64,000 bases of DNA from Octopus sinensis (lineage: Eukaryota): contig NC_043014.1 in NCBI RefSeq assembly GCF_006345805.1, positions 23,808,001 through 23,872,000 of the forward strand, in the 5' to 3' direction. Positions 11,121 to 13,493 of the stretch are shown piece after piece (position 1 is the stretch's first letter; the number at the start of each line of letters is the position of its first letter). The notes beneath the pieces were generated by a model. It saw only the letters and a program-made list of their open reading frames with translations, was not told the DNA's origin and ran no database searches. The position numbers were made by a program, and so were the translations under genes.

Positions 11121-11282
11121 CTAATCATTTTTTAATTCTATCAAATTGCCCTACCTGTCTACATTCAATGTGCCAAAATAAGAATAGCTTTTCATGGTTT
11201 GCGATTTAACTCCCATTTTTAGCATGATGGAAATCCACTTAGTGGCTTTCCCTCAGTGTATAACTCTTATACACACACGCAC

Positions 11283-11318
<36 letters not shown>

Positions 11319-11339
11319 ATTCAATCCTGGAAACCTTGT

Positions 11340-11444: not shown

Positions 11445-13493
11445 CCCTTTCGTTACATTTTTTTTATTTTTTAAATACATCCCTTATGTGTTTCAATTAA
11501 TTTCTACCATAATCATAAATTTAGTCTGGTTTCATTAAACAACTATAACTTTTTTATTTATCAATATATTAACGTAAATTTTGGAAGATAATTTAATGAA
11601 ATGTTCTCAACCAAATTCTATACTATAATTTTTGTCACAAAGTGACTCTAATTGCAGGTAGATACAGGTAAATTCAACAAAATATAAAATTATTAAAATT
11701 TTGTTCAAACATCGCTATAGAAAATGGGTTATTAGCTAATATTCAATTGGGTATACAACAAAATTTTATGATAGAATTTGTTATTCTGGGTAACTTTCTG
11801 ATACCCATAATAATATTTATGGCAAAATAGTCTTAATTTCATTTAAGGTTGTGGGAAACCACTAACTATCCTTTCTTTCACTTTGTTTACATTTAGCGTA
11901 ACGGTTCGTTTCCGCCGTAATGATTTCAAATAGGCTCATTTGAAAAAGTAAAAAGAAATAGTCCAAGGCTTTACTCTTGTGGTGTGAACGATGAAAGAGG
12001 ACAACAGAAAAAAGGAGAATGGAAATACAATCAGGCCTTACCTTGGCGAAGATTAGTTCAGATCCCTCTCAGTCAGCTTGATACGTCTGGTGCCTTCGTC
12101 GTCTCAATTGCAACTTGTCGATCCCACACGTGCGTCGTCGCTCGCCGCTTCCTGCCGTGCATGCGCCCTGCAAGCCCTACTTCCACCCTCCCCAATCTGT
12201 CATCCTCTCATCAACACCTACAGATCTACAGATCACTGAACCGGCTTTCTCACTCGCTCCCTGCTCCCGCACCATAACTGGTTTCATAATCAGCCAACCA
12301 GGGAGGAGGGTGCCATTCCCTCTGTGGTTGCAGTGCGACCCTAGGACTTGTTCCTGGTGTGTTGCTGCTGGCCTCGTCATCCTGTCTACTGCTGTTGTTT
12401 TCGTCTTGCCCACTGCTGCTGGTCCCATTCTCTGAGGCATGGACTATCCTCCGTGCTAAGTTGATCCGTCTCCACCATCTCTAAATATAACGCCAACGCC
12501 GGGCCATCCAAGTACAGCGGCATGAAGCTCGCCAGGTCACCTATACCATGGAGCTTCGCCACCAACTTCACTCTCTTCAACCAAGCGACCACATCTGTGT
12601 CGCCGCAAAGCGGTGTTATAAGTTCGTGTGAAACCCGAGAACTCTGCATCATTTTTATTTATAAAACCAATTGTTTATATGCCGAAATAGCTTGTGGTGT
12701 GAACAATGAAAGAGGACAACTGAAAAAAGGAGAATGGAAATACAATCAGGCCTTACCTCGGCGAAGATTAGTTCAGATCCCTCTCAGTCAGCTCGATACG
12801 TCTGGTGCCTTCGTCATCTCAATTGCAACTCGTCGATCCCACACGTGCGTCATCGCTCGCTGCTTCCGCTTCCTGCTGCGCATGCGCCCTGCAAGCCCCA
12901 CTTCCACCCTCCCCTATCTGTCATCCTCTCACCAACACCACAACTCTCCTGGGAAAGTATGTGGCTTGGTCCAGTTTCTTCAGAAAAATCACCGAAAGAA
13001 ACAGTTTTTAAATTTTCACTCCATTCAGGTGCCAATTCATTTTCTTTATCGCTGTCGGAGCTCTCGGATTCACTGTTTTCACTTTCGGAAAATGAAACAT
13101 CAGATTCATTATCAAATACCACGTGCTTTTTTTTTTCAGTCATAGAGTTAGATTTATGAAGGTCTTCAGTAGAAAATTCTTCGAATTCTGACTCGCTGCT
13201 TGATATAATGAAATTCGTATCCATTTTTTGTCAGAATTACAAATTTTGAAAACACAATAGGAACAAATTTCGGAAAAAAATCTCCCAAAATTCACGGAAT
13301 TAAAATTACATTTCGATTGTTGTACAAAACTGTAGTTGAACTGTTTACGAAGTATAATACGTGTTTTCACGAATGTACTAAATAGATTTGCTCTGATATT
13401 CTCATTTAAATATGAACAGGTAAATACGGGCGGTTTGGTCACATTAACCAAAATTTTTTTCGGGCGGCTTTGGGCGGTTTGGTAACGAAAGGG
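11445..13493 (-). mobile_element. Non-autonomous piggyBac (internally deleted), copy 1, carrying an LTR insertion
   Basis: TIR CCCTTTCGTTAC/GTAACGAAAGGG; flanks TTAA and TTAT; transposase N-terminus MDTNFIISSS..; colinear with 59235-60300. Confidence 0.92.
11978..12942 (-). mobile_element. 965-bp deleted Ty3/Gypsy LTR element (LTRs 11978-12222 and 12693-12942; gag fragment)
   Basis: TG..CA LTRs with about a dozen substitutions and 2 indels; 5-bp TSD ACTCT; gag-like ORF 12386-12652 (DVVAWLKRVKLVAKL..FMPLYLDGPALALYLEM). Confidence 0.93.

What the first reader, a model, noticed from the sequence alone, without database searches (positions are those of the whole stretch)
11978..12942. Mini LTR retroelement whose PBS and PPT positions both match tRNA-Phe
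Seen: abutting the 5' LTR (element on the minus strand), the + strand reads GCCGAAATAGCT (12681-12692); there is no TGG-type PBS. Abutting the 3' LTR there is no polypurine tract; the + strand reads GATCTACAGATCACTG (12223-38) then CCGGCTTTC (12241-49). Knowledge: metazoan tRNA-Phe(GAA) begins GCCGAAATAGCT (12/12 match, from its mature 5' end), and after the anticodon reads GATCTAAAGGTCCCTG (13/16) and later CCGGGTTTC (8/9). Inference: element RNA could pair with one tRNA-Phe at both ends. Minus-strand priming could use a 5' tRNA fragment ending at nt 12, and the second duplex could replace the PPT or bridge the RNA ends. I recall a Gypsy lineage (Ronin) described with tRNA-Phe homology at both internal ends, so this may be a non-autonomous member rather than wholly new; that recollection is unverified. 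Retention of both tracts in a 470-bp internal region that lost all of pol suggests they are the cis-required signals.
Basis: partly seen in the sequence, partly recalled or inferred. Interest (0 to 1): 0.8.

Follow-up and report, generated by a model that had tools for sequence, protein, structure and literature searches.

The report
Decayed retrotransposon with tRNA-Phe 5'-end primer site
This is an old, internally deleted, one-off copy of a 4.2-kb retrovirus-like jumping gene. Its primer site really does pair with the first 12 bases of the host's phenylalanine tRNA, but the supposed second tRNA match at its other end is an ordinary conserved hairpin next to a purine tract that this copy has lost.

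Summary

**Primer site: real.**
- The 12 bases abutting the 5' LTR are an exact complement of nt 1-12 of the host tRNA-Phe(GAA).
- The same 12-mer is present in both families of the host genome that I saw.
- About 34 distant relatives keep the form ACA|AGCTAT-NNN-GGC.
- No element carries an internal complement of its own site, so an outside RNA is the likely primer.

**Second tRNA-Phe tract: not supported.**
- Its similarity to tRNA-Phe is at chance level (P about 0.08).
- It is a stem-loop whose stem changes by paired substitutions across relatives, independently of primer-site type.
- In all eight lineages with independently mapped LTR starts, this stem-loop is followed by exactly 8 G-rich bases (the polypurine tract) and then the LTR.
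- The window copy has lost that tract through a 9-bp deletion.

**"Mini element": not a family.**
- It is a 3.2-kb deletion with a 6-bp microhomology.
- Its junction is unique in the 2.7-Gb genome.

The scan has already reported the tRNA-Phe 5'-end primer site at least eight times on other DNA of this genome. I found no published description of it.

The parts
11973..11977 (.). Target-site duplication ACTCT, left copy
   Evidence: Identical 5-mer at 12943-12947, directly outside both LTRs
11978..12222 (-). 3' LTR of the element (245 bp). Reads TGTAGG...CACCACA in element sense. Its first bases are altered compared with the 5' LTR.
   Evidence: Direct repeat with 12693-12942. 95.1% identity, K2P 0.051, two indels.
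12222..12223 (-). Place where the family's polypurine tract (AGGGGGGCG in element sense) is missing from this copy
   Evidence: Full copies read ...GTGATCTGTAGATC-AGGGGGGCG-TGTGGTG, and 109 genome places match this. The window reads ...GTGATCTGTAGATC-TGTAGGTG.
12223..12235 (-). Pre-PPT stem-loop (element sense TGATC-TGTA-GATC, closing A lost).
   Evidence: The stem covaries across relatives: TGATC/GATCA, TGATG/CATCA, GAAC/GTTC, AGCTTT/AAAGCT, AGCAGCG/CGCTGCT. It is always 8 nt before the LTR.
12236..12448 (-). Remainder of the family's roughly 470-nt region between the pol stop and the 3' LTR
   Evidence: blastn to full copies: element positions 489-965 match L061 4222-4705
12449..12454 (-). 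Deletion junction: 6-nt microhomology ACGGAG (element sense) joining gag codon ~66 to the 3' non-coding region. About 3.2 kb is missing.
   Evidence: The blastn segments overlap. A 34-mer across the junction occurs once in the genome at up to 3 mismatches.
12455..12652 (-). Gag remnant, first 66 codons
   Evidence: 61/66 identical to the 253-aa Gag of full copy L063
12653..12680 (-). Short leader between the PBS and the gag ATG
   Evidence: Read directly from the sequence
12681..12692 (-). Primer-binding site AGCTATTTCGGC (element sense), complementary to nt 1-12 of host tRNA-Phe(GAA)
   Evidence: 12/12 to the host tRNA. Conserved in all copies and, with a variable middle triplet, in relatives.
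12693..12942 (-). 5' LTR of the element (250 bp). Reads TGTGGTGT...ACACCACA in element sense, an 8-bp terminal inverted repeat.
12943..12947 (.). Target-site duplication ACTCT, right copy

Best explanation
Window 11978-12942 is an old, dead, internally deleted copy, on the minus strand, of a 4.2-kb autonomous LTR retrotransposon family. The family encodes Gag and a Pol with protease, RT, DUF7047, RNase H and integrase. It belongs to a large lineage found in cephalopods, crustaceans and environmental samples. Shown: the 12 bases after the 5' LTR pair perfectly with nt 1-12 of the host's main tRNA-Phe(GAA). The conserved block starts at the LTR end and stops at the tRNA's mature 5' terminus. Shown: the family's plus-strand signal is a 5-7-bp stem-loop, then 8 G-rich bases, then the LTR. 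This copy keeps the stem-loop but has lost the G-rich tract, so the 'second tRNA-Phe match' is that stem-loop and not a tRNA pairing site. Shown: the short form is a single deletion event, not a propagating mini-element. Inferred: minus-strand DNA synthesis is primed by the 5'-terminal 12 nt of tRNA-Phe after a cut behind nt 12, or behind nt 10 if the integrase trims the AG after the terminal CA. The model is the RNase H cut that frees the 11-nt self-primer of Tf1. Plus-strand strong-stop synthesis would then run off the tRNA's 5' end, which would set the 12-nt length of the PBS. Inferred: the stem-loop marks the 5' edge of the polypurine primer.
For: Anatomy: LTRs, TSD and orientation. Full copies and the deletion with its microhomology; the junction is unique. 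Gag remnant 92% identical. LTR divergence K2P 0.051. Host tRNA-Phe sequence, with at least 150 gene copies. Among the sampled host tRNAs only Phe starts with this 12-mer. PBS conserved in about 30 fetched copies, including subfamilies at about 80% identity. It occurs in 48 genome places, including a second family with 69% Pol identity and a different LTR end. It occurs in Argonauta. With the middle triplet varying (TTC, CGC, CAC, CCC, CTA, TAC, CCG) it occurs in 34 relatives, always directly after ...ACA, while the base after it varies freely. No internal complement of the PBS exists in any of the 34 elements. PPT present in 109 genome places. Hairpin + 8 nt + TG in all 8 lineages with independently mapped LTR starts, against a 6.5% base rate for a stem of 5 bp or more. 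A U-G wobble variant (TGATTT/AGATCA) fits pairing in the sense RNA.
Against: No experiment or read data shows the primer. The cut at nt 12 is pure inference, and a 12-nt primer is unusually short. The tRNAs that would match the non-Phe PBS types could not be checked, because I could not search those host genomes; this applies in particular to GCCTAGATAGCT in crab and mantis shrimp. One subfamily (L136, L150) has a G:U-rich 11-12/12 complement 39-46 nt upstream of its PBS, so an intramolecular contribution there is not excluded. Whether the 3.2-kb deletion arose before or after insertion cannot be told.
Confidence: 0.75

Rival explanations
1. One tRNA-Phe pairs with the element RNA at both internal ends (nt 1-12 at the PBS, nt 37-69 before the 3' LTR), and the second duplex replaces the polypurine tract or bridges the RNA ends, as in the bipartite PBS of Ty3.
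For: 13/16 and 8/9 identities to the host tRNA-Phe at 12223-12249. This copy has no purine tract.
Against: The similarity is at chance level (P = 0.08; 33 of 365 control windows). The family has a PPT, and only this copy lost it. The core of the match is a near-palindromic stem-loop whose stem covaries among relatives. Elements with the Phe-type PBS carry unrelated stems (L103 AGCAGCG/CGCTGCT, Argonauta TGATG/CATCA, L128 ATGATAA/TTATCAT), and elements with other PBS types carry TGATC/GATCA. The CCGGCTTTC part is absent outside the octopus families.
Confidence: 0.04
2. Tf1-like self-priming: the PBS pairs with the 5' end of the element's own transcript, and the match to tRNA-Phe is incidental.
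For: There is no TGG, and the 12-nt duplex is about the size of Tf1's 11-nt duplex. In the L136/L150 subfamily a G:U-rich complement lies 39-46 nt upstream.
Against: No element of 34 holds a complement of its PBS at up to 1 mismatch anywhere. Allowing G:U pairs, the best LTR match is at chance level in 31 of 33 elements. A 12/12 match to the host tRNA-Phe ending exactly at its mature 5' end is about a 1-in-10^5 coincidence, even allowing for about 50 tRNA types and both tRNA ends.
Confidence: 0.04
3. The conserved AGCTAT-NNN-GGC block is a protein-binding, packaging or integrase-end signal, and the true primer is something else.
For: The flanks (AGCTAT, GGC) are invariant across very distant relatives, and no primer has been observed.
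Against: The block varies only at the positions where tRNA acceptor stems vary (nt 4-6). Its two edges coincide with the LTR end and with tRNA nt 1. In the one host that could be checked it equals the major tRNA-Phe exactly. Two octopus families with 31% Pol divergence keep it identical.
Confidence: 0.12
4. The 965-bp form is a functional non-autonomous (TRIM/LARD-like) element mobilised in trans.
For: It keeps the LTRs, TSD, PBS and the 3' non-coding region.
Against: The junction 34-mer is unique in 2.7 Gb at up to 3 mismatches. The PPT is missing. The LTRs are 5% diverged.
Confidence: 0.03

Closest known systems
Tf1/Tf2 self-primed LTR retrotransposons of fission yeast (own knowledge: Levin 1995; Lin and Levin 1997)
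   Same: There is no TGG PBS. The primer duplex is 11-12 bp and involves the very 5' end of an RNA. A cut at the end of the duplex would have to create the 3' OH.
   Different: In Tf1 the partner is the element's own transcript. Here no internal complement exists, and the partner matches a host tRNA 5' end.
copia, 1731 and Ty5: priming by a cleaved fragment of initiator tRNA-Met (own knowledge: Kikuchi 1986; Ke, Gao and Voytas 1999)
   Same: The PBS pairs with a part of a tRNA other than its 3' CCA end, so the tRNA must be cut to give the primer end.
   Different: Those elements pair with the anticodon stem-loop region of tRNA-iMet and give a primer of about 39 nt. Here the pairing is with nt 1-12 of tRNA-Phe, in a lineage with PR-RT-RH-IN order.
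Ty3 bipartite primer-binding site (own knowledge: Gabus et al. 1998)
   Different: Here the candidate 3' contact fails the tests of statistics, conservation and covariation.
Ordinary internally deleted LTR retrotransposon copies; TRIM/LARD non-autonomous elements
   Same: LTRs, TSD and PBS are kept and the coding region is lost.
   Different: TRIM and LARD elements form multi-copy families with a shared internal region. This junction is single-copy.

Membership tests
LTR retrotransposon (general) | Two direct LTRs with TG...CA ends and terminal inverted repeats, flanked by a short target-site duplication | tested here: met
   LTRs at 11978-12222 and 12693-12942, ends TGTGGTGT/ACACCACA, 5-bp TSD ACTCT
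LTR retrotransposon (general) | Family members encode Gag and a Pol with PR, RT, RNase H and IN | tested here: met
   L063 has a 253-aa Gag and an 841-aa Pol with gag-asp_proteas, RVT_1, DUF7047, RNase_H/RVT_3 and rve. Many copies have open frames.
LTR retrotransposon (general) | Polypurine tract abutting the 3' LTR | tested here: met
   Met for the family: AGGGGGGCG in 109 places. Not met in the window copy, which has a 9-bp deletion there.
   This order is shared with BEL/Pao elements and retroviruses, so it is not diagnostic.
   RVT_1 scores below its Pfam cut-off, and there is no RT_RNaseH, RT_RNaseH_2 or chromodomain hit. A Pol profile hits retroviral IN, RT and PR in the PDB, with no Ty3 chain among the best 60. 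No reference RT set was available for a tree.
BEL/Pao | Peptidase_A17 protease and DUF1758/DUF1759 Gag signatures | tested here: not met
   Absent from the Pfam scans of five family Pols
Tf1-like self-priming elements | The start of the transcript (R) is complementary to the PBS | tested here: not met
   No complement at up to 1 mismatch in 34 elements. The LTR scan is at chance level in 31 of 33. Transcript starts were not mapped.
Ty3-like bipartite PBS | A second tract near the 3' end, complementary to the same tRNA, conserved and changing together with the primer tRNA | tested here: not met
   There is also no extra complementarity in the 200 nt after the PBS.
tRNA-fragment-primed elements (copia-like mode) | PBS complementary to a non-3'-terminal part of a host tRNA | tested here: met
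   12/12 to nt 1-12 of host tRNA-Phe
tRNA-fragment-primed elements (copia-like mode) | The cleaved tRNA fragment is found as the primer in particles | not testable with these tools
   Only assembled contigs of public runs were available
TRIM/LARD non-autonomous LTR elements | Several insertions share the same short internal region | tested here: not met
   The junction is unique in the genome

The most novel reading that the evidence does not exclude
A whole lineage of small LTR retrotransposons of marine invertebrates starts reverse transcription from the 5'-terminal 12 nt of a host tRNA (tRNA-Phe in cephalopods). This would be a further priming mode beside tRNA 3'-end priming, copia-type internal-fragment priming and Tf1 self-priming. 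The lineage also uses a fixed stem-loop + 8-nt G-tract module for plus-strand priming. The window copy is only a dead witness of this.
Probability: 0.5. Interest if true: 0.8.

Novelty: new variant of a known kind. Interest (0 to 1): 0.55.

Why it matters
How LTR retroelements choose and shape their primer sets their dependence on host tRNAs. It also sets their exposure to tRNA-fragment-based silencing, which so far is known to target PBS sites that match tRNA 3' ends. A lineage that pairs with a tRNA 5' end would escape that control. It would need a defined cut in the D stem, and it would tie PBS length to the tRNA's own 5' terminus. The specific new claims of this finding do not hold: there is no bipartite tRNA-Phe site and no mini-element that preserves cis signals. 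Its value is therefore as one more, degraded, instance of the primer site, plus the recognition of a conserved pre-PPT stem-loop.

Tried and rejected
- **Bipartite tRNA-Phe pairing:** rejected by shuffle statistics, by the family PPT and by stem covariation that is independent of PBS type.
- **Self-priming:** rejected.
- **Extra tRNA-Phe complementarity downstream of the PBS, like the Ty1 boxes:** none. Scores are at noise level and hit different tRNA parts in each element.
- **Amplified mini-family:** rejected.
- **ARAGORN on the window:** no tRNA gene.
- **Literature:** seven searches found no description of a PBS complementary to a tRNA 5' end. The 12-mer appears only as a tRNA-Phe northern probe. 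DUF7047 is not mentioned in any paper. The library lacks most subscription-journal papers, so this is not proof of absence.
- **Public reads:** every run offered was held as assembled contigs, and whether it was RNA was only guessed. The contigs cover the element in short pieces at 90-99% identity. They show neither transcript ends nor primer junctions, so they gave no evidence either way.
- **Fetching the second octopus family (69% Pol identity):** Its two junctions were read from pattern searches instead.
- **Assigning the non-Phe PBS types to tRNAs:** could not be done, because the host genomes of the relatives are not searchable here.
- **My hairpin scan:** it selects for hairpins. For that reason the claim rests on the eight lineages whose LTR start was mapped independently.

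Full report
**Observation**

- LTR1 is 11978-12222 and LTR2 is 12693-12942. Both run TGTGGTGT...ACACC(T)ACA on the + strand.
- ACTCT lies directly outside both LTRs (11973-11977 and 12943-12947), a 5-bp target-site duplication.
- The repeat finder reports the same repeat pair.
- The LTRs are 95.1% identical (K2P 0.051) with two indels, so this is an old insertion.
- GCCGAAATAGCT is at 12681-12692, GATCTACAGATCACTG at 12223-12238 and CCGGCTTTC at 12241-12249.

**Family and orientation**

A search of the window's own 2.7-Gb genome finds many relatives. In them the two halves of the window element lie about 3.7 kb apart.

Full copies are about 4.2 kb. On the strand that corresponds to the window's minus strand they encode:
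- a 253-aa Gag;
- an 841-aa Pol with protease, RT, DUF7047, RNase H and integrase, in that order.

The window copy keeps the first 66 Gag codons (61/66 identical to a full copy). It then jumps, across a 6-nt microhomology (ACGGAG, window 12449-12454), into the non-coding stretch before the 3' LTR. About 3.2 kb is missing. A 34-mer across this junction occurs once in the whole genome at up to 3 mismatches. The 'mini element' is therefore a single deletion event and not a propagating non-autonomous family. What it retains says nothing about cis requirements.

**The primer site**

The host has the canonical metazoan tRNA-Phe(GAA), which begins GCCGAAATAGCT. At least 150 places match its first 31 bases. 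Among the other host tRNAs sampled (Lys, Thr, Ala, Cys, Arg and a variant Phe), none starts with this 12-mer.

In element sense every fetched copy reads ...CACA|AGCTATTTCGGC. This includes subfamilies only about 80% identical in DNA. Only three variant 12-mers were seen, each with one base changed, and they look like post-insertion changes.

A pattern search finds 48 such junctions in the genome. They include a second family whose Pol is only 69% identical and whose LTR end differs.

The same 12-mer follows the LTR in an Argonauta element with 61% Pol identity. A crab element and a mantis shrimp element read AGCTATCTAGGC at that place.

Among 80 environmental contigs that encode relatives (35-57% Pol identity), about 30 reach the site. 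All of these read ACA|AGCTAT-NNN-GGC, with NNN = TTC, CGC, CAC, CCC, TAC or CCG, and the base after the block varies freely.

The conserved block therefore has three properties:
- it begins at the LTR end;
- it ends where a mature tRNA begins;
- it varies only at tRNA positions 4-6, where acceptor stems differ between species and tRNA types.

This is what pairing with a tRNA 5' end predicts. I could verify the tRNA only in the octopus-like host.

**Not self-priming**

None of 34 elements contains a complement of its own PBS at up to 1 mismatch. With G:U pairs allowed, the best LTR match is no better than in shuffles in 31 of 33 elements. The exception is one small subfamily (L136, L150). The 200 nt after the PBS hold no consistent further complementarity to tRNA-Phe.

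**The 3' tract**

Full copies read ...GAGAAAGCCGGTTCAGTGATCTGTAGATC-AGGGGGGCG-TGTGGTG. In the genome, 109 places match hairpin + 9 nt + TGTGGTG, and almost all have AGGGGGGCG in the gap.

The family thus has a short G-rich polypurine tract. The window copy has lost exactly these 9 bases and has a slightly altered LTR start (GATC|TGTAGGTG). Because the 5' LTR of the same copy starts normally, this is most simply a later mutation.

The part that resembles tRNA-Phe is a stem-loop, TGATC-TGTA-GATCA. Eight lineages have an LTR start that I could map independently of the hairpin: two octopus families, Argonauta, crab, mantis shrimp, L100, L102 and L103. In all eight a 5-7-bp stem-loop ends exactly 8 nt before the LTR. 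The base rate for a stem of 5 bp or more at a random place is 6.5%, and 2% for 6 bp or more.

The stem changes by paired substitutions:
- TGATCT/AGATCA
- TGATG/CATCA
- AGCAGCG/CGCTGCT

A hairpin-selecting scan of further contigs adds GAAC/GTTC, AGCTTT/AAAGCT, TAGTTCC/GGAACTA, TTGATT/AATCAA and others. A TGATTT/AGATCA variant keeps pairing only as U-G in the sense RNA.

The stem does not follow PBS type. L103, Argonauta and L128 have the Phe-type PBS with unrelated stems, while elements with CGC or CCC sites carry TGATC/GATCA.

Taken on its own, the 50 nt next to the window's 3' LTR align to tRNA-Phe with score 17. That score is reached by 8% of dinucleotide shuffles and by 33 of 365 windows elsewhere in a full copy. 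The PBS scores 24, the maximum for the element.

The second tRNA-Phe duplex is therefore rejected.

**Mechanism**

Shown:
- the pairing potential with tRNA-Phe nt 1-12 and its conservation;
- the absence of a self-complement;
- the stem-loop + 8-nt G-tract + LTR module.

Inferred:
- The tRNA's acceptor and D stems open and nt 1-12 pair with the PBS.
- A cut behind nt 12 gives the 3' OH. The cut would fall behind nt 10 if the integrase removes the AG that follows the terminal CA, as retroviral integrases remove two bases.
- The nearest model is the cut by Tf1 RNase H at the end of an 11-bp RNA duplex (own knowledge).
- Plus-strand strong-stop DNA would run off at the tRNA's 5' end, which would explain a PBS of exactly 12 nt without any need for a blocking modified base.
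- The stem-loop may set the 5' limit of the polypurine primer.

I put about 0.5 on the priming model.

**Classification and literature**

The Pol has the domain order of Metaviridae, Belpaoviridae and Retroviridae. It lacks the Pfam signatures usual for Gypsy (RT_RNaseH, RT_RNaseH_2) and for BEL/Pao (Peptidase_A17). A profile of 14 family Pols hits retroviral integrases, RTs and proteases among solved structures, with no Ty3 chain in the best 60. A language-model look-alike search also ranks retroviral Pol clusters next after the family's own cluster. I therefore leave the lineage unplaced.

'Ronin' appears in the library only as a Repbase name for pufferfish Gypsy elements.

Seven literature searches found no description of a PBS that pairs with a tRNA 5' end. 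The library misses most subscription journals.

**Earlier notes of this scan**

At least eight follow-ups on other pieces of this genome reported the same tRNA-Phe 5'-end primer site and also found it undescribed. I reached the PBS result before reading them and re-tested it here. They add no independent support. None of the notes shown mentions the pre-PPT stem-loop or the 3' tract.

**Limits**

- Public runs were available only as contigs and were uninformative.
- The hosts of the relatives could not be searched for tRNAs.

Noticed in passing
G000:C15:43562502-43582194 (not in the window; seen in the listing): About 90 exact copies of the tRNA-Phe 5' 31-mer lie at a regular spacing of about 200 bp on one strand. 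This is a large tandem array of tRNA-Phe genes or of a tRNA-Phe-derived repeat. Many tRNA-Phe copies are followed by the same TCCGGTG.
   Followed up: no
L033-L039 (G000 contigs C8591, C8615, C8740, C9587, C9733): A second, 72-nt tRNA-Phe(GAA) variant begins GCCCAAGTAGCT and scores 74.6 bits with the Rfam tRNA model. It does not match the element's PBS.
   Followed up: partly
window 12948-13340, minus strand, read together with 11860-11977: With the element and one TSD copy removed, a 132-aa acidic, serine-rich open frame on the minus strand spans the empty site. Further open frames downstream include a stretch (FGGKVITFGEDFSQ) that recalls Pif1/Helitron-type helicases. The retrotransposon may therefore have inserted into another repeat or gene.
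   Followed up: no
L136:1939-1950 and L150:1185-1196 (metagenome contigs): In this subfamily a G:U-rich stretch 39-46 nt upstream of the Phe-type PBS can pair with 11-12 of its 12 bases. This is above shuffle expectation, unlike all the other elements.
   Followed up: partly
L063/L065 (G000:C9313:20287-24482 and C10:82745470-82749665): Two full copies have 100% identical Pol and the same flanks rich in ATT and CTT microsatellite. They probably represent one locus assembled twice (a haplotig), not two insertions.
   Followed up: no
L071 4370-4460 (G000:C2:153946390-153946480): This copy has a duplicated, rearranged start of its 3' LTR (GGGGGGGGTGTTGG, then a second partial LTR start 70 nt later).
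   Followed up: no
window 11268-11320: A compound (CA)n(TA)n(TG)n microsatellite forms a long palindrome.
   Followed up: no
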